64,000 bases of DNA, taken from Macrostomum lignano. Lineage: Eukaryota. The notes beneath the pieces were generated by a model. That model was not told the origin of the DNA and ran no database searches. It saw only the letters and a list, made by a program, of their open reading frames with translations. The position numbers and the translations under genes were made by a program. Positions 27,301 through 63,806 of the stretch are shown here, one piece after another. The stretch lies in assembly GCA_002269645.1 (NCBI GenBank), contig NIVC01001468.1:89870-153869 (forward strand), written 5' to 3'. How positions within the stretch are numbered: the first letter of the stretch is position 1; each line of letters begins with the position of its first letter.

Positions 27301-30300
27301 GGAAGAGAGACGGGGAAAGGGAAGAGAGACGGGGAAATGGGAGAGAGACGGGGAAAGGGAAGAGAGAGACGGGGAAAGGGAAGAGAGACGGGAAATGGGA
27401 GAGAGACGGGGAAAGGAAAGAGAGACGGGGAAAGGAAAGAGAGACGGGGAAAGGGAAGAGAGACGGGGAAAGGGAAGAGAGAGACGGGGAAAGGGAAGAG
27501 AGACGGGGAAAGAGAAGAGAGAGACGGGGAAAGGGAAGAGAGAGACGGGGAAAGGGAAGAGAGAGACGGGGAAAGGGAAGAGAGAGACGGGGAAAGGGAT
27601 GAGAGACGGGGAAAGGGATGAGAGACGGGGAAAGGGATGAGAGACGGGGAAAGGGATGAGAGACGGGGAAAGGGATGAGAGACGGGGAAAGGGATGAGAG
27701 ACGGGGAAGGGATGAGAGACGGGGAAAGGGATGAGAGACGGGGAAAGGGATGAGAGACGGGGAAAGGGATGAGAGACGGGGAAAGGGATGAGAGACGGGG
27801 AAAGGGATGAGAGACGGGGAAAGGGATGAGAGACGGGGAAAGGGAAGAGAGACGGGGAAAGGGAAGAGAGACGGGGAAAGGGATGAGAGACGGGGAAAGG
27901 GATGAGAGACGGGGAAAGGGAAGAGACGGGGAAAGGGAAGAGAGACGGGGAAAGGGAAGAGAGAGACGGGGAAAGGGAAGAGAGACGGGGAAAGGGAAGA
28001 GAGACGGGGAAAGGGAAGAGAGACGGGGAAAGGGAAGAGAGACGGGGAAAGGGATGAGAGACGGGGAAAGGGATGAGAGACGGGGAAAGGGATGAGAGAC
28101 GGGGAAAGGGAAGAGAGACGGGGAAAGGGAAGAGAGACGGGGAAAGGGATGAGAGACGGGGAAAGGGAAGAGAGGCCTGTAACGCAAGAGCCCTGTATGG
28201 TTTAGCAAAAAAGTACATAAAAATACCGCTAGACTCCCGCGGCAGCCGCTCGTTTGGCGACCTGGGCGCGTACACTCGCCAGTGCTTGCGCCCTTCGAGC
28301 TGCATAACGAAGGCTTCAATGTCGTCCCAATGCGGCGCGAACCCCTGCGTACCGGGCGGAGTCAGGTAGACATTGGCGCCAACAAAAGACCCGAACAGTT
28401 CGTGCAAAATGCTCAGCTTTTGATAAACGCGATCGTGAAACACCTGCGGACAGAGGAGGCGCAGCGAACAGCCCGACTGGTAGAACTGCCAGGTCTGGCT
28501 GACCAGTGCGCGGCCCTCCGGGTTGTGCGTCTCGCGCTTGCCTGTGGCGCCATGCGGAGCGGAGTAGTGGCTTTGATTGGCTTGATTTTATTTGAGTGTG
28601 GGGTGGCGATGGCCCAGAGCTGAGGATCTGGGAGGCTGGCTCAGCAACTGAGGATCTGGGAGGCTGGCCCAGCAACTGACACTCTGGGAGACTGGCCCAG
28701 CAACTGAGGATCTGGGAGGCTGGCCCAGCAACTGAGGATCTGGGAGGCTGGCCCAGCAACTGAGGATCTGGGAGGCTGGCCCAGCAACTGACACTCTGGG
28801 AGGCTGGCCCAGCAACTGAGGAACTGGGAGGCTGGCCCAGCAACTGACACTCTGGGAGGCTGGCCCAGCAACTGAGGATCTGGGAGGCTGACCCAGCAAC
28901 TGACACTCTGGGAGGCTGGCCCAGCAACTGAGGAACTGGGAGGCTGGCCCAGCAACTGACACTCTGGGAGGCTGGCCCAGCAACTGAGGATCTGGGAGGC
29001 TGACCCAGCAACTGACACTCTGGGAGGCTGGCCCAGCAACTGAGGATCTGGAAGGCTGGCCCAGCAACTGAAACTCTGGGAGGCTGACCCAGCAACTGAC
29101 ACTCTGGGAGGCTGGCCCAGCAACTGAGGAACTGGGAGGCTGGCGATGGCCCAGCAACTGAGGATCTGGGAGGCTGGCTTAGCAGCTGAGGATCTGGGAG
29201 GCTGGCCCAGCAACTGAGGATCTGGGAGGTTGGCCCAGCAACTGAGGATCTGGGAGGTTGGCAGTGCAGGCCTTGCAACTGAGGATCTGAGAGACTGTCA
29301 GTAGCTCAACAACTGAGGATCTGGGAGGTTGGCAGTGCAGGCCTTGCAACTGAGGATCTGAGAGACTGTCAGTAGCTCAACAACTGAGGATCTGGGAGGC
29401 TGGCGAGGGCCCAGCAACTGAGGATCTGAGAGACTGTCAGTAGCTCAACAACTGAGGATCTGGGAGGCTGGCGAGGGCCCAGCAACTGACGATCTGAGAG
29501 ACTGTCAGTAGCTCAACAACTGAGGATCTGGGAGGCTGGCGAGGGCCCAGCAACTGAGGATCTGAGAGACTGTCAGTAGCTCAACAACTGAGGATCTGGG
29601 AGGCTGGCGAGGGCCCAGCAACTGAGGATCTGAGAGACTGTCAGTAGCTCAACAACTGAGGATCTGGGAGGCTGGCGAGGGCCCAGCAACTGAGGATCTG
29701 AGAGACTGTCAGTAGCTCAACAACTGAGGATCTGGGACGTTTCGATGGCGTTCGAAAATGAAGGTTGTGATAAGTCTTAAGTTCACTATGCATGGATCAG
29801 TTTGGTTGGCAGTGGAGATTACTAATGCTGCTAACGATATCAGAGTAGTTCGGCAAGTGGCGGTAAAGAATCCGGGGATCAGAAGCAGTCTATTTAATTA
29901 GTCTAGAATTTTAATAGAATCTATAAACGATTTTTGAACTGCATCAAATCCCAGTCTCATTATTGAATTAATTGGGGCATTTAAAATATCTAGAAATCTA
30001 TAAATAATCGGCGCTGGATACTCAATTTTGCTAATAATAAGTCACCCCCTGCCACCAGCAGAAATACAGCAGACTATTTAAGGCAAACCAAAATAATAAA
30101 ACACGGTAAACAAAGAACCACTGACTTGAAACGGGAAATTTTGGAAAACAGCTCGAAAGAGATTTTCGAAGGGTTTAACGAAACCTGAGAAGGTTTGGTA
30201 AAAACACACAAAGGGCCTGTTGCACTGCGAAAATCTTCGGGCTTATAGGATAACAGGAAAATTGTTTGTAGGTCTGGTCTGAGGAAATAAAACACTAAGA

Positions 30301-45684: not shown

Positions 45685-48600
45685 CTATGGACGGAGGGTT
45701 GGCGCCGCCCAGGGAGGTCCCCCAGTGTCGCCAGCAGCTATAGTGCTCTCTGGAAAGGAGAGTTCAGCCCTGCGGGTGGCCCGAAGGTAGCGCATTAGCT
45801 GATTAAAGTTTTCGGGTTTGCACGCTTCAGTAATAGATGTGTGTGGCCCGAGGTAAGTGAGTCTGGCCCACGTGAAGGCGGGACAGATGCTGACGAAATG
45901 CTCAGCGGTTTCGTCACCTGAGTTGCAGAAACTACAGGTGGCGTTGTTGGCGTTGCCCTGCAGGTACTGGTGCCTGGAGAAGCAGCCGTGACCAGAGAGG
46001 GTCATGGTGGCAGCCCGGATGTCTCTGCGCGAGAGGCGCAAGAGGAGCTTCCGGAGCTGGTGAGAGGGCTGAGGGACAGCGCCTCTGGATTGCCTGCAGT
46101 TCGTGCGGTTCGCCCAAGTCGAGCGGTGCTGAGTCCTGATCCACGCTTTGATGCGCGAGTCGATGACACAGCCAGGAATCGGGACAAGAGGTTCGGGGCC
46201 GAGAGAGGAGCCGGAGGCACCAACTTTTGCAAGGGTGTCAGCCAACTCATTTCCTCGGATCCCCACATGCCCCGGAACCCACTTAAGGGTAATTTTGTTG
46301 GCGGAACCCAACACGTTGAGGAGTTTGATACAGTCGAGGACTGTAGCAGAGTTGGTGCTGCAGCCACTGATGGCGTGCAAGGCAGCTTGGCTGTCCGAAT
46401 GGAAAATGATGTTCTTACCAGTAACGCCAGTGGCGAGAAGCTCTGCAGTGCAGGAGCTGATGGCCAGAACTTCATTTTGGAAAACACTGGAGTTGACCCC
46501 AGTGTATTGAGCGTGGGTAGCGATGACCCCCCGTTCAGAAAGATTCCAACACCAAAGCCGGTGTTGGCTGACTGCTTAGAACCGTCGGTGTAGCAATGAG
46601 CTCACCAGGGTTCCATTGGTCATTGATGTTATCGCGCGAGTCGATAGCTACGGAGTAGCGCTGTCTCAGGTTGAGCGTTGAGGCAATGCCATCGGTGAAG
46701 ACGCGATTGGCCTGACACTCGTTGAGAAAGTTGAGGCACAGATCGCTATGCGGGACAAGGTTCCGCTTAGCAGGTGCTCTCATGTAAATGAATTTGACGC
46801 CGGCATCAATTAGACGCGCGTCGTTCTAGCCGCCTCACCCCTGATGAAGAGGTCAAGAGGCGGAAGATTAAGGAAGGCCCCCATGCCAGCAAAGGGCGTG
46901 GACCTGGTGGCGTTGCAGATGAGCCTACACGCTCTGCCTTGGATCGTGTTGAGCAGGTCTGCATGGCTTTTGACCTGGGTAGCGCTAACCCAGACAACAG
47001 AGGCGTACGTAATGGCAGGTCTAACTACGGAAGTATAGATCCACCAAAGCCGCTTTGGGGATAGACCCCAAGAAGTGCCAAGTGCTCGTCGGAGCTGGGC
47101 CAGGATGGCTGAGGCACGCTTGGCTTTTGCTTTCACGTGGAGGACCAGTTGAGCCGGTGGTCAAGTATGACCCCGAGACATCTGGTCTGGTGCGCGAAGG
47201 CAATATCTCTGCCGTAGAGCTGCAGAGGACGTATGTTCCAGCGTAGTCTGCTGGTAAACATAATGGCAACGGTTTTGGGCTCAGAGAGTTCCAGACCATT
47301 GTCATTGGCCCAGGATTCTGCTTTGCGGATAAAGCTCTGCATCAGATCCCTGAGCGTGCTGGGAGACGGTCCTGCCACAATGGCCGTGACGTCATCAGCA
47401 TACCCGACTTTGAAGACGGGGTCGGGTCGGGAGTCACTCAAAGAGCGTCCATGACCAGGTTCCAGAGCGTCGGGGTGAGGACTCCGCCTTGGGGTCCACC
47501 CTTACAGACTCTGGTGGAGGCAGTTTGCCCAAGAAGTTGGGCAGTGACCGTACGGTTGGAGATCATGTACATGATCCACCGTATGATGGTAGCATGAGCT
47601 TTGCGATTTTGAAGGGCCCTCTGAAACGCTTCAAAGATAACGTTGTCGAAGGCGCCAACAATGTCAAGAAAGAGAGCCAGAGCGTAACCGTCACCCAGTA
47701 CCGCCCTTTCAATCTTCTCGACAATCGCATGCAGGGCGCTGTCAGTCGACCTCCCGGTACGGAAGGCGTGCTGATTATTGCTGAGGGGCATCGCTGTCAG
47801 CTCGCAGGACAGCAGCCGCCAGAGAATAAGCCTCTCAGTGAGCTTAAGCATTGCTGACGTTAAGCTAATAGGCCGGAAGGCCTTGACGCTTTGGTAGTCG
47901 CCCTTCCCAGGTTTGGGAATAAAGACTACCCGAGCTTCAGTCCAGCATTTGGGAACGTATCCCAGCTGGATAGAGGCCCGCATAAGATTGCGGGTGAGTC
48001 TCAGGAACGAGGGTATCTTGGCTGCTTCACGAAGGAGAACAGGGTAGATACCATCAGGTCCAGGAGATTTGAAGGGTTTGAAGGTTCTGACCGCACGAGC
48101 GATTAGGTCTTCAGTGACAATGCCCGCCGCTAGGGTGGCTCCATCCATCGAATGGTTGGGCTCCGGTCTAGCAGTAGGTACCCTCGGGAAGAATGTGCTA
48201 AGCATATGCTGAAGCACTTCTTCAGGGTCTTTAGTAAGAGAGCCATCATCTTTTTTGATCATGGCTAATTTGGACATTTTGTCCATTGTAAGGGCCTTGA
48301 CAAGCCTAGAAGTAGGTCTGTCTTGATCCAATTCATTGCAGAATTGGCGCCACTTACATTCTTGGCCTTGCGCACTTCAGATTTGAAATTGCGGGAGGCT
48401 TGCCGGAAAAGCTCCATGTCCTCCGGGTTTCCGGTCTTCATGGCACGGCGATGAAGGCTTTTGGCCTTCCGCCTGAGTTTCCCCAGCTCCGGGTTCCACC
48501 ACGGCGCCGAGGTCTTGCCTTTGTAGGCGCGAGCAGGACAAGCCGCTTCGTAGGCTGCAATAATGCAACCTGTCAGCGTCTCAGCCATATGATCCACATC

Positions 48601-49419
48601 CTCGCAGGTCTCAATCGGACGTAAGTCCGTGAGTTCCTGCAGGTGCAGATCAAGGGTAGCCTTGTAGGCTGCCCAATCAGTGTTGCGGATATTGCGTCTC
48701 CAAGTGATCGGAGACTGGGTTTTAGTGTCCGCGATGTTAAAGGCGATAAAGCAGTGGTCAGACAGGGAGGGCTCCTCAGACCAGACTCTCCACTCCTCAA
48801 CTCTGTCAAAGAGTCTTGGGGTAACGAGTGTGGCGTCGAGGACCTCGGCCCATCTGCCATTATTAAAGGTAGGAGTGCTGCCGCGGTTGCAGAGCATGAG
48901 GTTTGTGTTAGAGATGAGGGCCAGAAGCTCCTCTCCTCTAGTGTTGGTATCTTTGCTGCCCCAGTGCTTGTGGTGCGCGTTGAGGTCGCCCCCTAAGCAC
49001 AGCTCAGCGTTCTGGGACTCGCAGTACTGCGCGAGGCGCAGTAAACTCTCAGGAGCAGGGTCTCTGTCGCCTGGGATATAAACCGAGGCAACAAGACACG
49101 TACGCGGAGAGAAATGATTAGATTGGATGACGCAAAGGTCTCCATCAGAGAGATCAGTCCTCAGCCAAGCCTGGAGATGGCTAGCAGCGAGGATAGCCGC
49201 TCTAGGGCGGCTGTTCCCCGGGCCACACACATAAAAATCAGAGTAGCCAGAGGGAATGTTGGGCAACTTACCGTTGCGCATCCAGGGTTCCTGGATCAGG
49301 ATGAGGCCTGGCCTGTACAGCTCAGCAATCTTCATCAGATTTACTGACGCAGATACGCAATGCTGTAAATTAATTTGCAGACAGAATGTCGCTCCTTTGG
49401 CAGCGTGGAGCTTAGTCAT
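45685..49419 (-). CDS. LINE ORF2: AP endonuclease, reverse transcriptase, RNase H and CCHC finger (several single-base frameshifts)
   Basis: APE: QINLQH, LIQEPW, GGDLNAH, SDHC. RT: FRPISL, PQGGVLTP, YADD. RNase H: YTDGSK, VFQNEV, HSDSQAA, WVPGHVGIRGNELAD. C-terminal CSFC...HFVSIC. Confidence 0.93.
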
Positions 49420-49441
49420 ACTGTATTAATGCAATTTCTGG

Positions 49442-50960
49442 CTAGAGCCCAGGGCCATCAAGGAGACTTGGACAACAGATCGTCCTCGTCCCAGGCCGCT
49501 GGGGCTTGACTGGGAGATGGGAGTTGGTCGACGTCCATGGCCTCCTCACCCCACCGGCCCCCCCAGCAGAGTCCTCAGGCTCCGATGACAGGATGGAGGA
49601 AGCTTCCTCACCTGCATCTTTACCTTCAGACCCCACTAGGGTGGCCGAGGAGAGCTCGGATTCCGAAGACCCGGCCTCGTCCTCAACTCCTTCTCCGACT
49701 GGCAGGTTTGGTTCCCGGGGCTTGGCCGGAGCCGTTGCCGCGGTCGCCGAACTGCTGCTAGCAGAGGGGCGAGATGCAGCTTTGGCTTTGGGATCGGCTT
49801 GCGCCTTTCCTTGGGCCTTAGGCTGCGCCCCGCTCTTGCCGGAGATGCCGGGGTTGGCAGTAGCCTTCCCTTTGGCAGACTTTCCTCGGCGCATCTTGAG
49901 CTTGAGGGCACCCAGCTGGAAAGAGGATCCATTAGGGTACCGACTCGCCCAAGTGCTGGAAAGGCCGAGGACAATTGAGTTGCCCGTCTCCCCCTGCGGA
50001 CTTTACGGTGATACACCAGTCCACTAGCAGGGAGGTCGGGGTTCAGACGCAGTAGGACCCGGCGAATAACGTCTGGTCCAGCTGCGGTGCTCTTAGCAGG
50101 GACGAAAACCACATAGGGTATCGTCTTTGGACGCTGGCCCTCGCGAAGAAAAAGAGCTCCGCCAAGGTCAGCATCCAAGGAGACCGTCGGTAGCCGCTGG
50201 AGCAGCTGCCGAGCGTCCTCCTCGCTGCTAGGAGCAATAAGAACGAATGTGCTTCGCAGCACCATCCGCTCAATGCCGATGGAGATTCCCTCCTCGACAG
50301 TCAGTTCAATCAGATAGGAGTCAACAGCACTCCACACTTTTTGAAGCTGATCAGTGGTCCAGTCCTGGTCGCGACCTTGGATGATCACTCCCGGGATTTT
50401 GGCCTTGGCCTTCGCCGCAAAGGTAGCTCCCGAAGGAACCTCCTTGTTGGCAGTGGCCATTTGTTGCGCCGTGGTTTCGGCCTCAGCAGCCGCAGCAGCA
50501 TCTCCAGGGAGCGCCGCCGCTGAACTACGGAGCTTCCACCGGCCGACCCGTCTGGTTGCCTTGGGACGCCAGTCGCTTCAGCATCCATGGTGGACGCCGC
50601 CGCTTTGGCCCCCGCAGCTCCCTTCTTGGCCTGCCTTTTGGCGCGTTGTTTAGCGCGTTTGCGCTCAAGCCGAGCCCGCTGAGCTTCGTCGGATCTGCCA
50701 GATTTGGCCGGTCCTTTAGGCTCAGAGCTCGCGGTTCCCTTAGATCCACCAGCGGAGCTGGCAGGTCTTTGGGTATTTTGAGTTTGGTAGCTCTGGTCGG
50801 ATCTGCCAGCAGAGCCAGCCGGTCCTTCCTTTGCCACAGTTGAATCAGTCGGTTGGGATCTGCCAGCAGGGCCGGCCGGTCCTTCGGACTGAGGTTGGGG
50901 TTTAGAAGGGTCCCCGTCCCTAGAATTAGTTTGGTTATCCATAGGCGGCTCGAAGGCCAT
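49442..50960 (-). CDS. LINE ORF1 (nucleic-acid chaperone-like), two frameshifts
   Basis: Overlapping frames 51017-50385, 50460-49636 and 49894-49442. Basic ARLERKRAKQRAKRQ segment; ends 22 nt before the ORF2 ATG. Confidence 0.7.
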
Positions 50961-52670
50961 GATGAAAGGTTGGTGGGCTACCCTCAAAGGGGCGCGGTAC
51001 CCACCCGGCCGCTCCACCTGACCGGGCAGTAGGCCAATAGCACCCTCAAGGCTGGCCCGACACCAGGAGGGGGACCGCTTGCGACCGGACTACTCCCCGG
51101 CCTTCCAGCCCATCGGCACGGTCAACACCTTAGGCATTAGAGAGTACGTTGAGCAGTACCACGGCCTGCAGGTTGGCGAGCCAGACCCGCATACCCAAAT
51201 TCGGCCGAAGCCACTGGATAGGGTCGCCAGCGCCGGAGCCCAGTCTGTCCAGCAGCCCTAGGGACTGCCTTGAACACACGCGGGGACGAGTACCCTGGGT
51301 CGACTTGCGAGACAGCGTGGGGGGGTCTGCGGCTGCCAGAGGCAAATAGAGGGTGCAGACCTCCCACCAGCCTTGACCTGCTGAAGATAGGGGCAGGCGT
51401 GAAGCATCGCAGACCTTAGCCCATGGGCCTAGTCTGTCTCATACTTCACTGGCATGCTGAATACGCCTTGGCGCGCAATACGTTACGGAGATAGGAGGCT
51501 TTTCATTTTTCAGCACAAAAATTGTTATTGCTTTTGTTAGAAGGACAACCCGATGTTCATCCATGAATGTATACGTCTCGCGCGCCTTTCTTTATATAGC
51601 TCTATTGATATTCATATGGCTTTTCGTTTAGAAAATTGGGAATTAGGAAAACCTGCCTCCTTATTTTTTCCAAGAAACGTAGTTTCCTGTCCTTACTTTG
51701 AGTAGTCCAGTGATAGATGAAGCGGTACGCCCCTTTCAAACAACTACGCGCGATTGCGAAACGGACCTCAGGTCTATATCAGATCAGAAATGAGAAATCT
51801 CACGGTTGCCCCCTTTCTCATACTAAGAAACTTGCATGGGATTACATAGAAAATTTGGAATATATTAGATCGAGGCATGTGTTCGCTTTCAATGTATATT
51901 ATTTTTGCTTGACCGCCTGTGATTGTGATTTATAAATGTGCACTTCGTAAGATACATGAAGTCTGAGCCTGTAGCTGTACAAGTATCTTGTAAACTTAAA
52001 ACGTTCTCGCAACGTTGTAACCTTTCGTTTTTGTTTGCTTTGTGAAAGCAGTGTCCTTTATAATTTGATAAACGAAGAATGAACTGAAACATCAAAGTGA
52101 CGCGATTACAAGAGAGCCATATACAAATAAAGTTTACACTAACATGCCGTATTGGAGAGAGTCATTAATAGCGCATCAATTTTGCAGCATCATTTTCAGC
52201 ATCAGCGACGCAAACAGAAACAGTGGGAAAGCAATTTTTGCACATTTCCAACTGCTGCAGCGTAGGCTTTTTTACAGCCTGCAAGTCTGAAACGCGATTA
52301 ATTTCTAGTGCAGAATGAGCGAAATTGGATACAGTTAGCGGCGCTTTCACATTGAAGACAGCTGCTTAATTTTGTTGCGGTCATAAATGCGCGCAATTAC
52401 GATCGATAGCACAATTTCAGCAGTTTTAGTGTCCTGTCCCCCCCCCCATTACATTCTGCCATACCCAACTGTCACATCAATTAAACAAACGTCCTATTAA
52501 AACGGAAATTTAGCTACAAGGCCAACCGCGGTGCATTTCGCAATTGGGATAAAAAGCCGTTCGAAAACAAATTATTCCAGTAACTACTTGACTATCCAAG
52601 CAGCAAACGCGCGCAGTGTGCGGCAGCTCCAGATTGTACTAACGGATACGTTTTCCAACTGTCACCTGCA

Positions 52671-53126
52671 ATGAAGAACGAAATCTTTGGTTTGCTTTTG
52701 CTAGCAGCTATTGTAGTGAGTTAACGGTATCTGTTTTATTGATTTACAATTTCAGCAGTATACTTTACTGATTGATGACTTACAGTTTTTATATTGTCAA
52801 TATAATCTGTATAGGCCAGTGAACCGTTTGAGGGGCTGACTGAGGAGGAGATGGAATTGAAGCTGAAGCCCTGTCTAGTCTACAACGTCAACTGCCCAGC
52901 TGACGGCAGCATGGGCAACTACAAAGAGATGAAAAAGGAGCTAGAAATGATGAAGGTTGGCATCAAGCTGCAGGGCGGCAGGACACCGCCAGAGTGCACG
53001 GAGTGCGGCCGAGGCGAGCGGTGCGACCGCGAGTGCTACTACGCCCTATTGAAAGTGGCGGTGTTGGAGCTCCCTCTCGTCCGGAATCAGAATCAGCAAA
53101 GGTTTCCAGGGAAGCGCTCCGTCTGA
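52671..53126 (+). CDS. 118-aa secreted six-cysteine precursor with C-terminal amidation signal (neuropeptide/hormone-like)
   Basis: Exon 1, 52671-52715 (MKNEIFGLLLLAAIV), donor GTGAGT. Intron 52716-52814 ends TATAG. Exon 2, 52815-53126, is in phase 0. Ends ...NQNQQRFP-GKR-SV*. Confidence 0.75.
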
Positions 53127-54127
53127 TGCTGGAAAATTTATTTCGGTACATTGAAATACACTGACTGCTCTGGCATTCTGCAGTATTCCGACTGAATGAG
53201 AACCAAATTAATTTTTTATGTAATTGCTACAATAAATCACACTTAAAATTATTAAAATATACACATAAACATACTTAGAGTCAGCGATATAGCGAAATTC
53301 TGAAGGCCTCGACTTTATTATGGGTGACGTCCATGATTTAGAGAATTTGGCATGCAGCAAAAATTTGTTAAAGAAATCAACTTTCTAAAAGTTCGCAACC
53401 GGTTCGCCCCCGTTGCATGACTACAATTGACCCTAAAAGTAGTCTATTGCGATTGAAACTTTATCAGTCATATTTTTCTACAAGAGGATGATGTAGCTTG
53501 CAGGTGGCACTTTTAAGTCCACGGGCTTTCTTTCAGACAAAAAATTGCTGTAATTTTCACATGAGTTTAGTTGTGTTTCTCCAACATACAGGCCACTGGT
53601 ATTCTTGCACAAGGACCATGATTTTAGGCTAATTCTAAGTCACATTATCAAGCAAGTATTATATTAAAGGAACAAAAAGCAACCCAGAACGTTTTTCAAG
53701 AGGATTTTTATTAGCCAGAGAGTTCAATAAATATGATTCATTGTTAGAGCATTTGAAAGCTACGTATGAAAAAACAAAGTATTCAAAGAAAGCATCTGCT
53801 CTGTGGCTCTTATCTGTAGCTAAAATTGATTGAAAATTGAAATTTACGAGCAACGCAGAGTCATACTTAGGTCTCAGAATTCTGCTTCAAATTCACCAAC
53901 TCTTAGAGGAAAGAGAAAAATGAGAAAAGTGTAGCATTTCAAAGAATCAGTCAACATGTCAATAGCAAGGCATGCGATTTAAGAAAAGGATAGGAATATA
54001 AATGATAGTTGCGTGAATTTACAGAGGCAAAAAAGACGAAACAGCATTTGAGAAAAGTGAACGAGGCAAAAGTTTTTTTGCTGTTAAACGGGGTTGCCAA
54101 GCTAATGATAGGTCAATGCTCCGGCGA

Positions 54128-54412
54128 GGACCGTAGCCCAGTGGTCAAGCGCAGGCTCTGATGCGCCAGCGGCCCAGGCTCGATTCCAAGTGCAGTCACT
54201 TTAATCTGGGGACTATATTGGAATCTCGGCTTGGCTCTGCTCGTGTAATTAACACCCTTCAGGGCCAACCCCCAATGCACAGTGAAGTGTACATGCCTAA
54301 CGATAAATAAAGTTAGGGCCGCTGTACACTCCTGTGTAAGTGTGTGCCTGTGCGTATGAAACGTACATATCCGCCCGCTTGTGTGCCTGCTCAGGGGAGT
54401 CGGCGGAATGGG
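54128..54412 (+). mobile_element. tRNA-derived SINE, copy 2
   Basis: A box TAGCCCAGTGG and B box GGCTCGATTCC; homologous to 23346-23626. Confidence 0.78.
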
Positions 54413-55172
54413 TCCCAAATTTGCAAATGAGCAAAAACGCTAGCTTAATCGAAAGCAGCGAGATCACCGTGGTCATCTTGAAACGCGCATTGCGCAAGAG
54501 GCGAGCACGTGATCAAATTTCTCGTGCTTCGGGTGAGAGTCAGTCACCTATAGCGCAGACAGTCACCTTAGAGTTCCCAGTTCCCTGCTCAAGCAGGTTC
54601 CCCTTAGTGCAAAGGTACATGCAGTAGCTCAGCCTCAGACCAGGGACAAATCTGTAAGCATATCAATAGCAAAACATGGATTTTTTTAGAAGAGATAAAA
54701 ATATTATACTTGAAACGATATTTTCATAAAAACTTACCGAGACGAAAATACGCTTTAGTTATGTGGAGGAAGCAAAATATTTGAATATTAATCATAAACA
54801 AAAATGATTAAGCACTATACAGAGGATATACAGATATAGACCCTATATTTAGCATCTATAGTAGAGACAGAAAATATCAGATACAAATTCAATTGCTTTA
54901 CAGGGAATTGAATTTAGGTTTAAAGTGCACGGTTCGCAATCCTTCTTATTCTTTTAAGAAGTCACTCGAATAAAGTTCAAGATGTTATTTCAAATTGCAA
55001 AAGATGCTGAAATTCCATCGACTCAAAAAAGTACGAGATTACGAGAAAAAACGTTATTTAGAAGAGTAAAAAATAAATGAAAAGATCGTGTTCACAATGC
55101 TCGATTAATAGAGGCATAAATAGTTAGTTAACGTTAAAAATATCCTCAAAAAATCCTTACTGCTCGACTCAA

Positions 55173-55522
55173 GGGGTCACAAACCCAAACTTTCACAAAC
55201 CCGAAACATCACAAACCCGAATTTTTCCAACGTCGAAGTTTCACAAACCCGAAGTTTCACAAACCCGAATTTTTACAAACCCGAAGTTTCACAAACCCGA
55301 ATTTTTTCGAATCCGAAAGTTCACCATGTCAAAATTTCGAATTTCCCTGGAGACATTAAAGACTAAAAAACCCGAAATTTTAGTCTGAAATTTGGAAAAT
55401 AAGCTAGAAGATTCGAGAATATGAAGTGTCTATTTTAAAAGTCCAGTTCATTGTATTAACTCCTTAGTTCATTTTGGCATCTTGCTACCTGACGTGAAAT
55501 TTCGGGTTTGTGAAAGCGCCCC
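55173..55522. mobile_element. Possible MITE/foldback remnant with subterminal TTTCACAAACCCGAA repeats
   Basis: About 7 direct copies at 55177-55310 and one inverted copy TTCGGGTTTGTGAAA at 55501-55515. GGGG/CCCC ends. The flanks GACTCAA/GGCTCAG are only an imperfect TSD. Confidence 0.4.
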
Positions 55523-55525
55523 GGC

Positions 55526-56451
55526 TCAGGGCAGCGCTGAAAAGAACCGTTGAATCTCCGCTGCTGTCATGGAGAAGTTCGCGATCGCAACGGCCTTAAC
55601 GGTGCCCTGTAGGAAACGATCCGGCCAACGCCGACCAATTTGGACGATGTAGCAGAAGCTCGAGGTCGGAGCGGTCGCTCCAGTTGACAGCACAAATGAG
55701 CCATTGAAGAATATTTTCCAATTTGATTCCGATCGGGTCAATCCGAGGTCAAGCCAAGTATTCGGGTTGTTGGGGAGAATTTTAGGTGTGTGTGAACCTG
55801 GTTGGCCGGAAAAAGAGCCGTACAGCATGTTCGGCTCGTTGAACTCCCAGAAATGCGGACCAAAATTCCCTAGGTTGTCGCACTGGCCGACATCAACGAG
55901 CGGCTGTACTTTCGGCTGCCTCTTCAGCCGCAGCAGCCAGGTGAAGGAGCCCCCGTTCACTACGTTGCCCACATCCTCGGTAGCCGCGTACGAAGACGCT
56001 CCGTCGAACTTGGCTCCGTCCTCAGTCCAGTCCACGTTCTCGCTGTGCAGCCGGTAGTTGCCGGGCTCGGCCTGGCACACGAGGTTGTCAAACCGGCTGC
56101 CGCCTCCTGCCAGCCACGCAGCCACAAAGCGCGCACCGACCGACTCGGAGCAGCTCGACAGAGACGAGAAGCGGTCGCGTTGCCGGCCTGAATGTGCCGG
56201 CACACCGTCTGGTAGCGGAAGAGGCAGCACGCAGCGGTGCGCTCATTCCACTGCGCAACCAGGTCTCCGGGACTGGCGCCCGCCTTCATCATGCAGGGCG
56301 CCACGCTGGGCGCCTTCCAGCAGCCTTGAGCGACGGTCTCGTTGAGGCAGCGGTCGCCGAGTTTGCACCACTTCGTCCTGCAGCCGGCGGAGACGTCTGT
56401 AACCATGGCAGCGCAAAAGATAGCAGTATGCATCAGCTGAATTATAGCCAT
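55526..56451 (-). CDS. Secreted protein: signal peptide, Cys-rich module and LamG/concanavalin A-like domain; one frameshift near 56170
   Basis: ORF 56451-55960 gives the hydrophobic leader and Cys-rich part (GCW...CMM...CC..YQ..C). ORF 56230-55526 gives the LamG-like part (AKFDGASSY, FTWLLRLK, WLDLGLT, IFFNG, IGRR...FLQGTVKAVAI...MTAAEI). One added base joins GNATA to FSSLSSC. Confidence 0.7.
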
Positions 56452-58595
56452 TTTGCATCTAGTAGAAGATTTTACGGCTTATTGTTTTGCTGCATTAGTT
56501 TTTGGGATTTCTGCAAGTTTTTAGGAAGAATCGGTTGCTTTAAACAGTGAACTCACTTGTTTTCTGGAAGTGGATGGGTTGAAGGAGGAGTTAGAAAGAG
56601 TTAAGAGGGGGCTTTGGCAAAGAAAGATGAATAAAACTAGACGGGAAAAAGTAAAGAGCCCATCATAACACGCTTGACTGCACTGCGCACCCGTCACGGC
56701 AATTCATGCGTGCTTTAGTGTATTTCTTTTAACTAACATGAGAGCAACTCAAACACTTAGGGTTCTGCATAGGAATGACCAAATCCCGACCATATTCCAG
56801 TCCCGAGATCCCGGGACCAATCTCGGGAAGCTCGCCCGGGAATAGAGACTTTCTTTTCTTTTTATACATGCAGCGCTCATTCATTCCGTCAGAAAAGCAA
56901 CAATAGTGAGATTTATAAAACTAGAAACTAAGGATTTGAGGACTGAGATATGAATGAAACTTGAATGATGTGGTCTATAATTGAATACTTCTTCATCAAT
57001 TATTCCATCCGTGGATCGATTTCCAAGGAAACTGTTTTATACATGGTAGAATGCTCACAATGAATGCAAGCGAAGTTTTATCTTTTTACTGTTTTAAAAC
57101 AAGAGAATATATCATATATAAAATTTTTCTATAAATCAAACATCATATAGAGCGTGTCTAATGATTAAACTAAAGGGGCTGAGGCTAACACAAACGTCTT
57201 CTTACAGGTTTTTATATTTTTCTTTTTTGAGCTGTGTGGTTCTATGAAGGTTCCAAGTTTAATCAGCCAGAAAACTAAATAGAAATGATTCATCTTTGTA
57301 TTTGAGATTTACTAATAATGAAAAAGCAAAATGTGGTACCCGATGCGGCTCGTTGTAGCTGCGAATAGAAATTACGAGCGACGCCGTGTCAGAGTGAAGA
57401 GTTTATTTGAGTGGTGATCAGTCACTCAAAAACTCCCACTTCTAGATACTGGGGAACAAGTGCCTATGTATATACAGAATCGAATAACTCTTACTGCAGC
57501 GGATCCTCTTGCGGTCGGCAGTCGGCGGAGTCTTGTCGGTCGTAGGGCTAGCTAGCTTGCTGAGCGGTGGCGGTGGCCGGTTCCGGTGAACAGCTGTTGT
57601 CTCCTGGAGTCCTTAACTTTGTCTGCGGGTCGACCAAAACAGGAGCGAATCAGAATTCTTGACGATCCTCGAGCTCGGAATTAACAATAGAACGTGCGCT
57701 CTTATGAACAATTGAATTCTCTGAATATCTGTGATAGGTCCTCCTGAAGGGCGTCTTCTTCGTTACGTCCGAAACGTAACGGATAACTCAATTCAAATTA
57801 ATAAATCCTCTAGGAATGTATCCTAGGAAACAAGGAGGCCTTTCTCAAATGTGTCGGCAATAAGTGGCTCTCGTAAACTCAATTAATCAAATTATTAGTG
57901 CTGTAGCAAAGAACTAAATCGGGTTAAACTTCTTCTCTCAGATGAGTCTTCTTGGTATTCCAAAGTCTTCATTGAGACCGCTCCAAGTCTGAATTTTTTA
58001 CTTGGTTTGTCGCTTAAATTTATAGTAACATTTTGGTGAAAAACTGGTTTAAAATCGTTTATTTACTTAGGTCACGTATGTTTGATTAAGGGGTCATGAA
58101 TGTTTGATCATTACCAAATATGGAATTAAGCAAATACAACTCCCGAGAACCGGTTCCTTGATCAAATAAACGTTGATCCTACGAAGGCTCTGAGTCACTT
58201 CTGTTTGCACATGACTCATTCTAAAAATGAGGTGTGCAAACATAATGAGCTTGAGTACGAGGTGTGCATCGTCAGCTGAGAGTACAGCAGAAAAATGTAC
58301 ATCAGAAGTACTGTCAATTGATACTATTGATGTACATGTATGTACATTTAGATTTCAGTGGCAGAGGTGCCTTTAGACTCCAGCCACTAAACTTCTGGAT
58401 GACCTTTATTAGAAAAATTGTGTTCGATTGAAATTTAAATAGCCGAATTGAACATCTTCAAGAATAAACGAACATTTCTTGGTCAGCACATTTGAAAAGT
58501 ACGAGATAAATATAATGGATAAAAACCTCAATTAAAATGGAAAGAAAAAGGGATTGTACCAAAAGAATTAAATAAGATTATACGCAATTTTTCTG

Positions 58596-59628
58596 TCGGC
58601 GAATTTGACTAGATTGTCGCCTAATTTTGACTAGATTGTCGCCTAATTTTGACTAGATTGTCGCCGAATTTGACTAGATTGTCGCCTAATTTGACTAGAT
58701 TGTCGCCTAATTTGACTAGATTGTCGCCTAATTTTGACTAGATTGTCGCCTAATTTGACTAGATTGTCGCCTAATTTGACTAGATTGTCGCCTAATTTTG
58801 ACTAGATTGTCGCCGAATTTGACTAGATTGTCGCCTAATTTGACTAGATTGTCGCCTAATTTGACTAGATTGTCGCCTAATTTGACTAGATTGTCGCCTA
58901 ATTTGACTAGATTGTCGCCTAATTTGACTAGATTGCCGCCGAATTCGACTAGATTGTCGCCGAATTTGACTAGATTGTCGCCTAATTTGACTAGATTGCC
59001 GCCGAATTTGACTAGATTGTCGACTAATTTGACCAGATTGTCGCCGAATTCGACTAGATTGTCGCTTAATTTGACTAGATTGTCGCCTAATTTGACTATA
59101 TTGCCGCCGAATTTGACCATATTGCCGCCGAATTTGACCGTATTGCCGCCGAATTTGACTAGATTGTCGCCTAATTTGACTAGATTGTCGCCTAATTTGA
59201 CTAGATTGTCGCCTAATTTGACTATATTGCCGCCGAATTCGACTATATTGCCGCCGAATTTGACCGTATTGCCGCCGAATTCGACTAGATTGTCGCCGAA
59301 TTTGACTAGATTGTCGCCGAATTTGACTAGATTGTCGCCTAATTTGACTATATTGCCGCCGAATTTGACTAGATTGCCGCCGAGTTTGACTAGATTGTCG
59401 CCGAGTTTTGACTAGATTGTCGCCGAGTTTGACTAGATTGTCGCCGAAATCGACTAGATTGTCGCCGAGTTTGACTAGATTATCGCCGAATTTGACTAGA
59501 TTTTCGCCGAATTTGACTAGATTATCGCCGAATTTGACTAGATTGTTACCGAATTTTGACTAGATTATCGCCTAGTTTGACTAGATTGGCGCCGAATTTG
59601 ATTAGATTGCCGCCGAATTTGACTAGAT
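58596..59628. repeat. 21/22-bp minisatellite (AATTTGACTAGATTGTCGCCT), about 48 copies
   Basis: Direct repeat. It generates the LVKLGDN/TRLSPNL ORFs. Confidence 0.96.
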
Positions 59629-60334
59629 TGCCCCTCCGATTCAGTCAATGGGCAGGTAAAGTACCTATTTTACAAATAAATACAACTAAAACTATCTACT
59701 CATACAAGTAATAAGCCAATTGATGAGGACGCACTTTTTCCAAATTTCACGCTCGCACATGGGTTCCAAACTTGCTAGCCTACTAACAGCAGGCTATGGG
59801 CGTTTTTCTCCCTCTTTTGTAATTTTTCTAGAATTAATACTAGTAGGACTTCTGTAGCTATATTAATCTGCCATACTTGTAGTTATAATAACATAGGCGC
59901 GGTTTTTTGCTGCTTTTGGGTCATAAATCATTTCGTCTGAGCTGGTCTGACCGCCACCTGCGCCTCACTCAGTGCTGGGGCTGGCGCCAGATGGTCTGAG
60001 AGGAAGCGAATGATAGCTTTTTTCTCATCATTTTGACAGGCCATCAAGATTTATGAGGTCAGGGCCTATTGTTCGTGTTCAATCAAGCATGTGACAGCTT
60101 TGACAGCTATGCGTTTTACCCCTAAAAGTACGTTGGGATTAGCAATTAGCGAGTTCTCTTCAATACCTCCGCTTTCCACTTAATAAGAGCTTTCTAATGT
60201 ATATTTTCTCATTGATTTTTGTCAATTCTGCGCGAAAATTCATAAAATAAAAAACATATTTTTTGCGATTTTGATTGATTTATGGCCGCACCTATCATAT
60301 TTTTACGACCCGAGGGAACTGATAGGATCTCCCG

Positions 60335-60910: not shown

Positions 60911-63806
60911 ATGGGATACAAGTGCTGTGTTCCAGCTTGTGTTACTAATTTGCCTCGGTATAAGAAGGACCCGACTGTTTCCATCCACAAGTTTCCTTCT
61001 TTCGAGAATCTGGATCTGCTGAACAAGTGGATCGCTACAATTCCTCGACAATGGACTGAGGCCGAGCTGTGTAAGCTGCGGTCTGACCCAAGTCACAACT
61101 CTCGGGTTTGCTCTCTGCATTTTCCAGCTAAGTTCTTTGTGACTGTCTCTATGGATTCCAACCCAAATCGCAAAAGGCCGGCATCTGACGATCCATCGAC
61201 TGCTACTGCTAAGCTGAAAAACCGGCGTCTGACAGATGATGCTGTGCCGTGCATCTTCCCGAATGTTGCATCCTACTTGAGCAAGGCCGTCCTGGAAGAG
61301 AGGCAAACGGTTTGTACATCGGCTGAGAGCCGTCGAGAGAACGACATCCAGCGTTGCGAGGTAGAAGCAGAGGAGCTTCTACAAAAGGATGTGATTTCTG
61401 ACTTCCACGCTATTGTGTCATACGATCTACCAGATCATCTAAGGTGCTTTTTCAAGGTGATCTCTGAATCGAGTGTAACCTTTTTTACAACTAGAATGTC
61501 CGGTGCCGGCAACTTGGAGATCGCCACATCGCTGAATGTTGGCCAAGAGCTGCTGTTTGAGGTCACAGTTGGTGGTGATAAGCAAGCCTCTTTTGCTGGA
61601 GATCTGGCAGCTGACGGCAGTCTTAAAACCTTTGCCCAACTTGAAAACATCCTAGCTAGGCTAAAAAATGTCCGTTTGGAAGATTGCCGGCATGGTTATG
61701 AGGAGCACCTCTTACTAGCTCAGGAGGCAGTCACGAAAGCTATCACCGACTTGTCAGCTAAGATTGAAGTCAAGAGTGATCAAGAGCTGGATACATGCAT
61801 TGAGGAGGCTGCTTTTGCTAAACTGAATTTTCTTGTCGAGCAGCTAAGCTTTTCGAGTTTGAAGAAGGGGAAGCTAACATACTCCAGCGAGCTACTTGCT
61901 TTTTCATACCTGTTGCAGCACCACAGCCAATCAACGTACAATTTCATTCGGAAATCCAACACAGTCAACCTCCCAAGTGTTAGGCATCTGCAGAGGCTTT
62001 CTTCCGGATTGAGCAATGACCCTGACATCAAGGCTACCGAAGATTATCTCAAGCTAAAAGTTGACAGCCTGCCTGAGTCTGAGAGGGTAGTGCTTCTTGC
62101 AATCGACGAATTTATTCGTCGAAGCGAATGGAATTCAGTGGAGGCAAGGTATTTGGCACTGACGCAGAAACCGATGAGCTCGCCAAACTGTGTGCGCTTT
62201 TTTGATCAAGTCGCTGCATGGAGACTTCCAGGAAGTAATTTCTCTTATTCCAAAAAGTAAGCTTAGTGCTCTGGACTTGCAAAATCACCTCACTGACTGC
62301 CTTGCTCTGCTTGATAGGGTTCACCTGAAGCCAGTGGTGTGCATTGTTGACAACAATGCAGTGAATAGGAGCCTCTTTCAGGGTCTTCTATGCAAAGGCA
62401 AGCTGCTATCATCAATTCCAAATCCGGTGTCTGGCGAGCCGCTGTTCCTTCTCTTCGACCCTGTACACAACTTTAAGAACATCTTGAACAATTGGATTTC
62501 GCGCCAGGTGTTTCAGTTTCCGGACTTTACCGATCCCCAGAAAATCCAAACAGCAGATTTTCGCGATTTGCACAAACTTCAAGAGCAAGAACTCGGGCAA
62601 CCAGCTCGGATCGCCTTTCAACTGAATACAAGGTCCTTGAATCCAACAAACCTGGAGAAGACTAATGTTCAGCACGCAGCCAGCATCTTCAGCGAGTCTA
62701 CTGTAGAAGCAGAAAAGTTATACAATTTTTCCTCTGGCTTGGTAGCTTTCCTAGCGCTCATTCTTAACATGTGGACGATCTGGAATGTCAAGACCACTAG
62801 GAAAGCGAAGGAAAAGCGGCTTCTCGACGCCGCTCCGCTGGTGCCGAACGATCACCGCCTCGACAAGCTGCGCCAGTTTGCCGCTTTCTTCCAACGTTGG
62901 AAGGATTCGAAGTTGCCCGGCTTGACTGCTCCCACTTTCCTTGCTGTTAAGTCCTGCTGTCTCACTCTTGCTGATCTTTCCGAGCACCTTTTCTCTAGGT
63001 TTTTATTTCCCTCTGTTTTGACAGGTAGGATAGTCAGTGACTGGATCGAGCGGCGCTTTGGTCGCTACCGCCAGTTTCATGGAGGCAACTATTTTGTTTC
63101 TGTCCGGCAGATCCTTCAAGCCGAGAAGAAAATTCGCGTTTCCAGCCTGCTTCAGTTTTATGGCCTTGGACTGAAAGATTTAAAAATTCTTGACCAGGCG
63201 AGTTCATCCGAGTTTTTTAATCCACACTTATCCGTGAAGCTTTCAGTTCTCCAGCATCTTGACGCCGCTCTTACATCTAGTGACCGAAACATTTGTTCCT
63301 ATCTTGGTGGCTACGTGTCTAAAGCTCTATGCGGCCAGCTGAAGTGCACTGACTGCAAGAATCTTCTACTTACTAACGATTACTTGGAGTTTATTGCCGA
63401 AGAGGATTGTGCTGACGACTTTGCCCTGATTCAAATGCGTGACCGAGGCGGTCTGAAGTGCCCCAGCAAATTCGTATTTTTTCTTTTGAAGGCATCCTAC
63501 TTCATGTTTGAACATCTGCGAGATTATAGTCTGTTAACTGCTGATCTTCTCACCTCTGGTAATTTAGTTCAAAATATTGTTGAGCTCTGCCAGGACTACG
63601 TGAGTGAATCCACTGATTTTACGACTCTTTCAAGCCAGACTTGCAGTTGTGGAAAGGCAGCTGCTACTCTTTCTTCGCGGATCTTAATTCCTGCAGTCCG
63701 GATTTATCTAAAGAATTTTGTCAATGAGACAAACGATGAGAAGGCGAAGAACCAGAAGGCGATGAATCGTAAGGCGTCCAAGCTTTCCAGCAAGAGTTCG
63801 AGTTAG
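60911..63806 (+). mobile_element. THAP-domain P-element-family (THAP9-like) transposase, about 930 aa, two 1-nt frameshifts at about 62111 and about 62187
   Basis: THAP C2CH: MGYKCCVPAC...HKFP...W...RVCSLHF. Catalytic motifs LAIDE, IVDNNAVN, FDPVHNFKN, DWIERRFGRYRQ..G.N. C-terminal CxxC motifs. Restoring two bases gives DEVYSSKRMEFSGGKVFG...AKTVCAFLIKS. TIRs not identified, and the right end may lie outside the window. Confidence 0.9.

What the first reader, a model, noticed from the sequence alone, without database searches (positions are those of the whole stretch)
52671..53126. Orphan secreted six-cysteine precursor with a C-terminal amidation site: candidate new peptide hormone or pheromone
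The ORF track misses exon 1. Spliced product: MKNEIFGLLLLAAIVA-SEPFEGLTEEEMELKLKPCLVYNVNCPADG...ECTECGRGERCDRECYYALLKVAVLELPLVRNQNQQRFP-GKR-SV. It has a signal peptide, an acidic pro-like segment, Cys spacing C-x6-C-x33-C-x2-C-x5-C-x3-C, and Gly-Lys-Arg. G-K-R is the established convertase/carboxypeptidase/PAM signal. Products could be an amidated 3-disulfide protein of about 97 aa or a short NQNQQRFPamide. The spacing does not match insulin, CHH/ITP or eclosion hormone as I know them, although the CxxC...CxxxCY end is loosely CHH-like.
Basis: partly seen in the sequence, partly recalled or inferred. Interest (0 to 1): 0.7.

Follow-up and report, generated by a model that had tools for sequence, protein, structure and literature searches.

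The report
Flatworm-specific secreted six-cysteine helical protein
This is a real two-exon gene of the flatworm Macrostomum lignano for a small secreted protein with three predicted disulfide bonds; it belongs to a previously undescribed gene family found only in this worm, and its hormone-like C-terminal amidation signal is not shared by its relatives.

Summary
GenBank has the same model as hypothetical protein BOX15_Mlig014137g1 of Macrostomum lignano, one residue different, from an RNA-seq-derived annotation.

It is not an orphan. It belongs to a multigene family with at least 8 paralogue groups, detected only in M. lignano. Members share a signal-peptide exon, a phase-0 intron and one exon per domain of about 77 aa. 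The domain has six conserved Cys plus conserved Pro, Arg and Tyr.

With the family alignment, AlphaFold2 gives a confident four-helix core (residues 21-100, pLDDT about 90) and a disordered tail (101-118). Pfam, PDB sequence search and Foldseek match no known family: not CHH/ITP, eclosion hormone, insulin, saposin, WAP, OBP or CSP.

The conserved unit is the folded domain, including the supposed acidic pro-segment. G-K-R occurs only in this paralogue, although 7 of 9 family proteins carry di- or multibasic tails. C-terminal trimming therefore looks like a family trait; amidation is gene-specific and unproven. NQNQQRFPamide is unlikely.

I found no expression data, so hormone, pheromone, gland or seminal product cannot be told apart. 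Interest is moderate to low.

The parts
52671..52715 (+). Coding exon 1: Met1-Val15, which is most of the signal peptide.
   Evidence: The same N-terminus is present in GenBank protein P0001.
52716..52814 (+). Phase-0 intron of 99 nt, GTGAGT...TATAG.
   Evidence: Read unspliced, translation stops at codon 18. A phase-0 intron at the same place, at the end of the signal peptide, is found in paralogues P0003, P0005, P0007, P0009, P0015 and P0017.
52815..53126 (+). Coding exon 2: Ala16-Val118 plus the TGA stop.
52836..53066 (+). Conserved six-Cys helical domain, residues 23-99. Cys at 35, 42, 76, 79, 85 and 89. P34, P73, R87 and Y91 are invariant or nearly invariant.
   Evidence: Family alignment A1. 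AlphaFold2 with A1 gives pLDDT of about 85-94 for residues 21-100, with helices at 25-38, 51-67, 74-78 and 83-99.
53067..53123 (+). Non-conserved, predicted-disordered C-terminal tail, residues 100-118 (ELPLVRNQNQQRFPGKRSV).
   Evidence: pLDDT is about 54. The tails differ among paralogues.
53109..53117 (+). Gly114-Lys115-Arg116. This is a canonical sequence signal for dibasic cleavage, carboxypeptidase trimming and amidation. It would leave Pro113-NH2.
   Evidence: Read directly from the sequence. Whether it is used is inferred, not shown. The Gly is not conserved in paralogues.
53231..53256 (+). Candidate poly(A) signals: AATAAA at 53231 and ATTAAA at 53251.
   Evidence: Similarity to the two other assembly copies runs through to 53287.

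Best explanation
**What is shown.** The locus is a transcribed two-exon gene of Macrostomum lignano. It belongs to a gene family seen only in this species. Each domain is encoded by one exon, and the family includes tandem two-domain members made by exon duplication.

**What is predicted.** The N-terminal 16-17 residues act as a signal peptide. The rest folds into a compact four-helix domain of about 77 aa locked by three disulfides. The joint loss of the Cys79 and Cys85 equivalents in two paralogues hints that these two are bonded to each other. The tail is flexible.

**What is inferred.**
- The functional product is the whole folded protein of about 96-97 aa (about 11 kDa, pI about 5.3). It is stored in secretory granules and released to act outside the cell as a ligand or binding protein.
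- In the granule, a PC1/3- or PC2-type convertase cuts after Lys115-Arg116. A carboxypeptidase removes both basic residues. If peptidylglycine alpha-amidating enzyme is present in that cell, Gly114 is converted to a Pro113 amide.
- Basic-tail trimming looks like a family trait. Amidation would be peculiar to this paralogue.

**What is not known.** The producing cell and the target. My split is roughly:
- 40% exocrine or reproductive gland product
- 25% neuro- or endocrine hormone
- 10% water-borne pheromone
- the remainder other functions
For: - **Gene model and transcript support:**
- **Family membership:** the exhaustive phmmer search gave true hits P0002/P0012, P0003, P0005, P0006, P0007, P0009 and P0010, with E-values from 1.7e-13 to 3.9e-4. 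All are M. lignano proteins. The profile search added P0019.
- **Conserved residues:** Cys35, Cys42 and Cys89 are invariant, Cys76 and Cys85 nearly so. P34 is nearly invariant; P73, R87 and Y91 are invariant.
- **Exon structure:** signal-peptide exon, phase-0 intron and one exon per domain. Exon lengths are 66/264/252 nt in the two-domain genes.
- **Fold:** AlphaFold2 pLDDT rose from 42 with a single sequence to 78 with the family alignment. The core is at about 90 and the tail at about 54.
- **Tails:** 7 of 9 family proteins have a di- or multibasic site in the tail or at the very C-terminus. FP[GDE]K[KR] is shared by the window protein, P0010 and P0019.
- **Processing enzyme:** M. lignano has a PC2 homologue expressed in neurons (PMC4490696; PMC12435804).
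- **Constraint:** pooled pN/pS between duplicated assembly copies of four family genes is 0.47 (13 nonsynonymous, 8 synonymous changes). The family is constrained, though not strongly.
Against: - I obtained no expression, peptidomic or functional data. Six papers were checked for supplementary gene tables. Four had tables held as text, with no hit; two had none held. The supplements of a seventh paper (the seminal-fluid in situ screen, PMC5977470) were searched for sequence strings without a hit.
- The Gly of G-K-R is absent from all other paralogue groups at that position, so amidation has no comparative support.
- The signal peptide was not scored by a dedicated predictor.
- The two-domain paralogues have no dibasic site between their domains. 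This fits binding or structural proteins better than hormone polyproteins.
- PC2 appears neuron-restricted in this worm, so a gland origin would need another convertase.
Confidence: 0.6

Rival explanations
1. The protein is a neuro- or endocrine hormone made in PC2-positive neurosecretory cells. It is released as a 3-disulfide protein of about 97 aa ending in Pro-NH2 and signals through a receptor. It would be a functional analogue of CHH/ITP or eclosion hormone.
For: - A canonical G-K-R sits two residues from the C-terminus.
- The KR site with Pro at P4 suits PC1/3 or PC2 rather than furin. This rests on established convertase specificities.
- PC2 is neuronal in M. lignano.
- The product is small, disulfide-rich and secreted.
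Against: - The Gly is not conserved in paralogues.
- No orthologue was found outside M. lignano, whereas protein hormones of this size are usually conserved across phyla.
- The family has two-domain forms with no cleavage site between the domains.
- No known hormone family matches.
Confidence: 0.25
2. The protein is an exocrine gland secretion that acts outside the worm or in the mating partner. Candidate sources are the prostate (seminal fluid), shell or cement glands, the epidermis and the pharynx. It would belong to a fast-turnover, lineage-restricted effector family.
For: - The family is seen in one species only, with paralogues 24-40% identical to the window protein, local tandem and inverted duplicates, and domain duplication.
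- Constraint is moderate, with pN/pS of 0.47.
- M. lignano is reported to have many prostate-specific secreted transcripts (PMC5977470, listed).
Against: - No link to any published prostate or tail-specific transcript was found.
- There is no sign of positive selection, although power is low at 21 substitutions.
- A KR plus Gly site suggests regulated-granule processing. That is possible in glands but not typical of bulk secretions.
Confidence: 0.4
3. The gene is a precursor for a short amidated neuropeptide, NQNQQRFP-NH2, cut out at Arg105. The Cys-rich part would be only a carrier.
For: G-K-R lies at the C-terminus. Paralogue P0003 has a true dibasic ...SKR|FFGFQG end that could release FFGFQ-NH2.
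Against: - Arg105 is a lone basic residue with no basic residue at -4, -6 or -8. This is read from the sequence and judged against established monobasic-site rules.
- The tail is the least conserved part, while the supposed carrier is the conserved part.
- There are no repeated peptide copies.
Confidence: 0.05
4. The protein is a small helical carrier or binding protein for hydrophobic ligands. It would resemble saposins or insect odorant-binding and chemosensory proteins by convergence.
For: - It is an all-helical, disulfide-locked domain of about 80 aa, and tandem two-domain members exist.
- The best hits are insect OBP4 (PDB profile search, E=2.1) and CSPsg4 (Foldseek, E=2.8). Both are non-significant.
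Against: - Both hits are at chance level, and the Foldseek TM-score is 0.21.
- Pfam OBP, CSP and saposin models do not match any of the 10 family sequences.
- The Cys patterns differ.
Confidence: 0.1

Closest known systems
CHH/ITP/MIH neurohormones (Pfam Crust_neurohorm)
   Same: Secreted, roughly 70-100 aa, helical, three disulfides, CxxC and CxxxC sub-motifs, and a C-terminal Gly plus basic amidation signal in many members.
   Different: The order and spacing of the Cys differ. CHH has C-x15-C-x2-C-x12-C-x3-C-x8-C; this protein has C-x6-C-x33-C-x2-C-x5-C-x3-C. Most paralogues have CxC rather than CxxC. There is no Pfam hit in any family member and no Foldseek hit to solved MIH or CHH structures. 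There is also no dibasic-flanked precursor-related peptide.
Cystine-stabilised alpha-helix motif (CxC...CxxxC), as in endothelin and apamin-type peptides
   Same: Most paralogues have C-x1-C-x4-6-C-x3-C, with the CxxxC lying in a helix. This resemblance comes from my own knowledge of the motif and was not tested.
   Different: In that motif the pairs are 1-3 and 2-4. Here the joint loss of the 2nd and 3rd Cys in P0010 and P0019 domain 2 suggests a 2-3 pair instead. The domain is also much larger and has two further Cys.
Saposin-like and WAP domains (UniProt's automatic names for paralogues P0010, P0012, P0005)
   Same: Small secreted disulfide-rich domains. Saposins are also helical with 3 disulfides.
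   Different: None of the 10 sequences matches a Pfam saposin or WAP model at E<=10. WAP needs 8 Cys. The saposin Cys pattern (C-x2-C...C...C...C-x5-C) is not met. No saposin structure was found by Foldseek.
Water-borne protein pheromones of marine invertebrates (for example Aplysia attractin)
   Same: Small, helical, three-disulfide, secreted and restricted to one lineage. This is from my own knowledge.
   Different: There is no sequence or Pfam similarity, the Cys spacing differs, and I have no behavioural or expression evidence.

Membership tests
New M. lignano six-Cys helical domain family (unnamed) | Six Cys in the register C-x5/6-C-x~30-C-x1/2-C-x4-6-C-x3-C, with P before Cys1, P-x-[ED] before Cys3, R two residues before Cys6, and Y/A after Cys6. 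| tested here: met
   Alignment A1. phmmer E-values to paralogues range from 1.7e-13 to 3.9e-4.
New M. lignano six-Cys helical domain family (unnamed) | A signal-peptide exon, a phase-0 intron, and one exon per domain. | tested here: met
   The window gene has exons of 45 and 312 nt. Eight paralogue genes were resolved exon by exon.
CHH/ITP/MIH | A match to Pfam Crust_neurohorm, the family Cys spacing and the family fold. | tested here: not met
   There is no Pfam hit at E<=10 for any of the 10 family sequences. The spacing differs. Foldseek against the PDB finds nothing.
Insulin/relaxin | B-chain C-x11-C and A-chain CC-x3-C-x8-C, with an excisable C-peptide flanked by dibasic sites. | tested here: not met
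   The Cys pattern does not fit. There is no Pfam Insulin hit. The K55-K56 pair lies inside a predicted helix and is not conserved.
Eclosion hormone | A Pfam Eclosion match and C-x3-C-x2-C-x12-C-x3-C-x10-C spacing. | tested here: not met
Saposin-like proteins | A SapB_1 or SapB_2 match, the saposin Cys pattern and the saposin fold. | tested here: not met
WAP four-disulfide core | Eight Cys forming four disulfides, and a Pfam WAP match. | tested here: not met
   Only six Cys per domain and no Pfam hit.
Insect OBP / CSP | A Pfam PBP_GOBP or OS-D match and structural similarity. | tested here: not met
   No Pfam hit. OBP4 scores E=2.1. CSPsg4 scores E=2.8 with TM 0.21.
Amidated secretory-granule peptide/protein (a kind, not a homology family) | A signal peptide plus Gly-[KR][KR] at the C-terminal end of the product. 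| tested here: met
   Read from the sequence.
Amidated secretory-granule peptide/protein (a kind, not a homology family) | The amidation Gly is conserved in relatives. | tested here: not met
   P0010 has FPDKRR and P0019 has FPEKK. P0005 and P0009 end in basic runs without Gly. P0017 has none of these. Only P0012 (GGRR, GGK) and P0003 (C-terminal Gly) have other possible sites.
Amidated secretory-granule peptide/protein (a kind, not a homology family) | The product is actually cleaved and amidated, and is co-expressed with a convertase and the amidating enzyme. | not testable with these tools
   This needs peptidomics and in situ or single-cell data. Only the presence of a neuronal PC2 in the species is documented.

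The most novel reading that the evidence does not exclude
The gene is the amidated member of a flatworm-specific family of disulfide-locked four-helix signalling proteins with a fold not represented in the PDB. That would be a new class of protein hormone or water-borne or mating pheromone, evolved within Macrostomum. The family's variable basic tails would tune processing or receptor use.
Probability: 0.15. Interest if true: 0.6.

Novelty: new variant of a known kind. Interest (0 to 1): 0.3.

Why it matters
M. lignano is a model for regeneration, stem cells and sexual conflict in hermaphrodites, and it supports RNAi and transgenesis. An uncharacterised family of secreted, disulfide-rich proteins restricted to this lineage is a ready candidate set for seminal-fluid effectors, gland products or lineage-specific hormones. 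The domain may also be a new small fold.

Taxon-restricted secreted cysteine-rich families are common in animal genomes, however. Without expression or processing data, this one is a lead rather than a discovery.

The practical results are these:
- The gene model is right.
- The 'orphan' label is wrong.
- The folded domain, not the C-terminal peptide, is what evolution conserves.

Tried and rejected
- **Pfam.** The protein alone and all 10 family sequences at E<=10 gave nothing relevant.
- **PDB.** The sequence profile search gave only OBP4 at E=2.1. Foldseek of the confident model against the PDB gave a best E of 2.8 and TM 0.21.
- **Spurious phmmer hits.** I rejected P0004 and P0011 (internally repetitive proteins matched in several stretches) and P0008 (zinc-finger repeats) as low-complexity or CxxC matches. 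P0002 is a fused gene model; P0012 is the correct 137-aa model.
- **Paralogues in the window.** tblastn found none.
- **Exact-sequence look-ups.** The 91-aa exon-2 ORF is not on record.
- **Expression data.** Six papers were checked for supplementary tables carrying the Mlig gene ids; four had tables held as text, with no hit, and two had none held. One of the tables is truncated in the library. The supplements of a seventh paper were searched for sequence strings, without a hit. McVeigh et al. 2009 is not held.
- **Two-peptide processing.** I considered cleavage at G69-G70-R71, giving ...LQG-NH2 plus a 42-aa 4-Cys Pro-amide peptide, and rejected it. The site is not conserved in any paralogue and lies between helices of a single confidently predicted domain.
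- **Cationic antimicrobial role.** I considered this and rejected it because the mature protein is acidic, with pI 5.3.
- **Homeologue comparison for this gene.** There is only one difference, G52887A (V40I), so it has no power on its own.

Full report
**1. The observation**

- An ATG at 52671 opens a 45-nt exon encoding MKNEIFGLLLLAAIV.
- Read unspliced, the frame stops at codon 18.
- A 99-nt intron (52716-52814, GTGAGT...TATAG, phase 0) joins it to exon 2 (52815-53126). Exon 2 runs to a TGA at 53124-53126.
- The mechanical ORF list only sees exon 2 from Met28 (52851..53126, 91 aa), so exon 1 is indeed missed.
- The spliced product is 118 aa with Cys at 35, 42, 76, 79, 85 and 89. G114-K115-R116 (53109-53117) is followed by Ser-Val-stop.
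- AATAAA (53231) and ATTAAA (53251) follow the stop.

**2. Organism and transcript support**

[quoted passage not shown] The only difference is V40I.

That protein is encoded on two other contigs of assembly GCA_002269645.1. Their DNA is 99.3% identical to the window around the gene. Within the 456-bp gene the only difference is G52887A.

Multiple near-identical copies are expected. The assembly is known to be highly redundant, and the strain carries extra large chromosomes (PMC5730564).

The Mlig gene models were built from RNA-seq and transcriptome assemblies, not ab initio (PMC5730564). The 52715/52815 junction therefore already has transcript-level support. The alternative acceptor at 52784 would put the frame into a stop; this is read directly from the sequence.

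**3. Not an orphan: a species-restricted gene family**

Pfam finds nothing. An exhaustive phmmer search of 1.84 billion representative proteins found the following:

| Hits | Form | E-value range |
|---|---|---|
| P0003, P0005, P0007, P0009 | small proteins, 108-128 aa | 1.8e-13 to 6.4e-5 |
| P0006, P0010 | two-domain proteins | 5.1e-6 and 3.9e-4 |
| P0002 | mis-fused model; the correct form is the 137-aa P0012 | 1.7e-13 |

- Three further hits (P0004, P0008, P0011) are repeat or zinc-finger proteins. I discard them.
- Every true hit is from M. lignano.
- A profile search with the family alignment again returned only M. lignano proteins and added the two-domain P0019.

In the alignment (A1):
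- Cys35, Cys42, Cys89, Pro73, Arg87 and Tyr91 are invariant.
- Pro34, Cys76, Glu83, Cys85 and Ala92 are nearly so.
- The register is [KR]-P-C-x5/6-C-P ... P-x-[ED]-C-x1/2-C-x4-6-C-x-R-x-C-[YMW]-Y-A.
- Identity of the window protein to its paralogues is 24-40%.

Gene structure is shared across the family.
- All single-domain paralogues have a 45-78-nt signal-peptide exon, a phase-0 intron and one exon for the rest.
- The two-domain genes have 66/264/252-nt exons. That is one symmetric phase-0 exon per domain, the signature of exon duplication.

Some members are clustered.
- Two two-domain genes lie 7 kb apart in L008.
- A second P0003-like copy lies 5 kb from P0003 in L003 and L004.
- The window gene is alone in its 64 kb.

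**4. Structure**

AlphaFold2 on the single sequence was uninformative (pLDDT 42). With the 10-sequence family alignment, mean pLDDT rose to 78.
- Residues 21-100 score about 85-94, with helices at 25-38, 51-67, 74-78 and 83-99.
- The signal peptide and the tail (101-118) score about 52-54.

It is one of the best-conserved stretches and has no cleavage site after it, since Lys33 is followed by Pro. It is therefore part of the mature fold.

The second domains of P0010 and P0019 have lost the equivalents of Cys79 and Cys85 together while keeping the other four. This single evolutionary event hints at a Cys79-Cys85 bond. I could not check geometry because coordinates are not returned.

**5. Comparison with known families**

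- None of the 10 family sequences matches any Pfam model of a hormone, saposin, WAP, OBP or CSP family at E<=10.
- The PDB profile search gives only insect OBP4 at E=2.1.
- Foldseek against the PDB gives CSPsg4 at E=2.8 and TM 0.21.
- All of these are at chance level.
- UniProt's automatic names for paralogues ('WAP domain-containing', 'Saposin B-type') are therefore not supported.
- The Cys spacing does not fit CHH/ITP, insulin or eclosion hormone.
- As far as these tests reach, the domain is a new family and possibly a new small fold.

**6. The C-terminal signal**

Gly-Lys-Arg two residues from the end is, by established biochemistry, the textbook substrate for three successive steps:
1. a PC1/3- or PC2-type convertase (P4 is Pro, so it is not a furin site);
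2. carboxypeptidase E/D;
3. peptidylglycine alpha-amidating enzyme, leaving Pro113-NH2.

M. lignano has a PC2 homologue expressed in neurons.

Comparison with the paralogues splits this signal into two parts.

Basic ends are common, in 7 of 9 family proteins:

| Protein | Tail end |
|---|---|
| P0005 | ...WRRRR |
| P0009 | ...RRRRSHRK |
| P0010 | ...FPDKRR |
| P0019 | ...FPEKK |
| P0003 | ...SKRFFGFQG |
| P0012 | a 40-residue tail, the last ~30 residues rich in Arg and Lys, containing GGRR and GGK |

The window's F-P-G-K-R lines up with F-P-D-K-R-R and F-P-E-K-K. The Gly, however, is present at that position only in this gene. C-terminal trimming at basic residues therefore looks ancestral to the family. 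Amidation is at best a feature of this paralogue.

The short product NQNQQRFPamide is unlikely.
- Arg105 is a lone basic residue without a basic residue at -4, -6 or -8.
- It sits in the least conserved, disordered part of the protein.

I also rejected an internal G69-G70-R71 site. It is not conserved and lies inside the predicted single domain.

**7. Selection and properties**

- Between duplicated assembly copies of four family genes I counted 13 nonsynonymous and 8 synonymous changes. Pooled pN/pS is 0.47. This indicates purifying but fairly relaxed constraint and gives no evidence of positive selection. Power is low.
- The mature protein (17-113) is about 11.1 kDa with pI 5.3. This argues against a cationic antimicrobial role.

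**8. What it most likely is**

*Shown:*
- a transcribed two-exon gene;
- membership of a species-restricted, exon-modular six-Cys family.

*Predicted:*
- secretion;
- a disulfide-locked four-helix domain;
- a flexible tail.

*Inferred:*
- The whole folded protein of about 97 aa is the active product.
- It is packed in secretory granules, trimmed after Lys115-Arg116 and possibly amidated.
- It acts extracellularly as a ligand or binding protein.

The producing tissue is unknown. I found no expression data in the supplementary tables I could reach.

The evidence on tissue pulls in two directions.
- The family is restricted to one species, has diverged far, has duplicated locally and includes two-domain forms without cleavage sites between the domains. 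All of this leans towards an exocrine or reproductive gland product, about 0.4.
- The PC-type site with Gly keeps a neuro- or endocrine hormone alive, about 0.25.
- A pheromone is possible but has no specific support.

**9. Novelty and verdict**

The gene is already in GenBank as a hypothetical protein. The family, its exon-per-domain architecture and the predicted fold are, as far as I could find, undescribed.

This is a new variant of a familiar kind: a taxon-restricted, secreted, cysteine-rich protein with prohormone-like trimming signals. It is a reasonable candidate for in situ hybridisation, RNAi and peptidomics in a tractable model. On present evidence it is not a discovered hormone. 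Interest: 0.3.

Noticed in passing
window 53288-59558: A 6.27-kb segment starts about 35 nt after the gene's second poly(A) signal and is absent from the two other assembly copies (L001, L002). It holds a ConA-like/Laminin_G_3 ORF (55526-56230, minus strand), a 16-bp array (55177-55324) and a 21-bp satellite of 49 copies (58594-59630). No terminal repeats were found, so it is not an obvious transposon.
   Followed up: partly
window 45685-49419 (minus strand): A LINE-like retrotransposon lies upstream of the gene, with endonuclease, reverse-transcriptase and RNase H ORFs. Part of the adjoining sequence (48668-50325) is missing in L001.
   Followed up: partly
window 60911-63806 (plus strand): ORFs resembling a THAP-domain / P-element transposase. 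They are 99.8% identical in L001 and L002.
   Followed up: no
window 13404-15563, 17235-17688, 21584-21973, 25773-26509, 27219-28174, 28610-29737: Six long minisatellite arrays with periods of 15-34 bp, up to 108 copies. They account for the extreme purine strand skews in the composition profile. One overlaps an ORF with a JmjC match (27058-28443, minus strand).
   Followed up: no
L008 2027-2793 and 10001-10740; L003 15933-16091 (minus strand); L004 11412-11676 (minus strand): Some family paralogues are clustered. Two two-domain genes are separated by an LTR retroelement, and a second P0003-like copy (72-77% aa identity, possibly a pseudogene) lies about 5 kb from P0003.
   Followed up: partly
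P0010 / P0018 / P0019, second domain: The second domain of the two-domain paralogues has lost the equivalents of Cys79 and Cys85 together (C-N-Y/F ... A-I-R-x-C). This hints that these two Cys form one disulfide.
   Followed up: partly
P0002 (UniProt A0A1I8IYK1) versus P0012: An older gene model fuses the family domain to a tubulin-tyrosine-ligase gene. The 137-aa NCBI model P0012 is the plausible one. UniProt's automatic names 'WAP domain-containing' and 'Saposin B-type domain-containing' for paralogues are not backed by Pfam.
   Followed up: yes
window 52637-52643 and 52548-52556: A TACTAAC branch-point-like heptamer lies 28 nt upstream of the ATG, but no AG follows it before the ATG. An ATAAAAAG TATA-like element lies about 115 nt upstream. 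Whether the mRNA is trans-spliced, which is common in this species (PMC5730564), was not determined.
   Followed up: no
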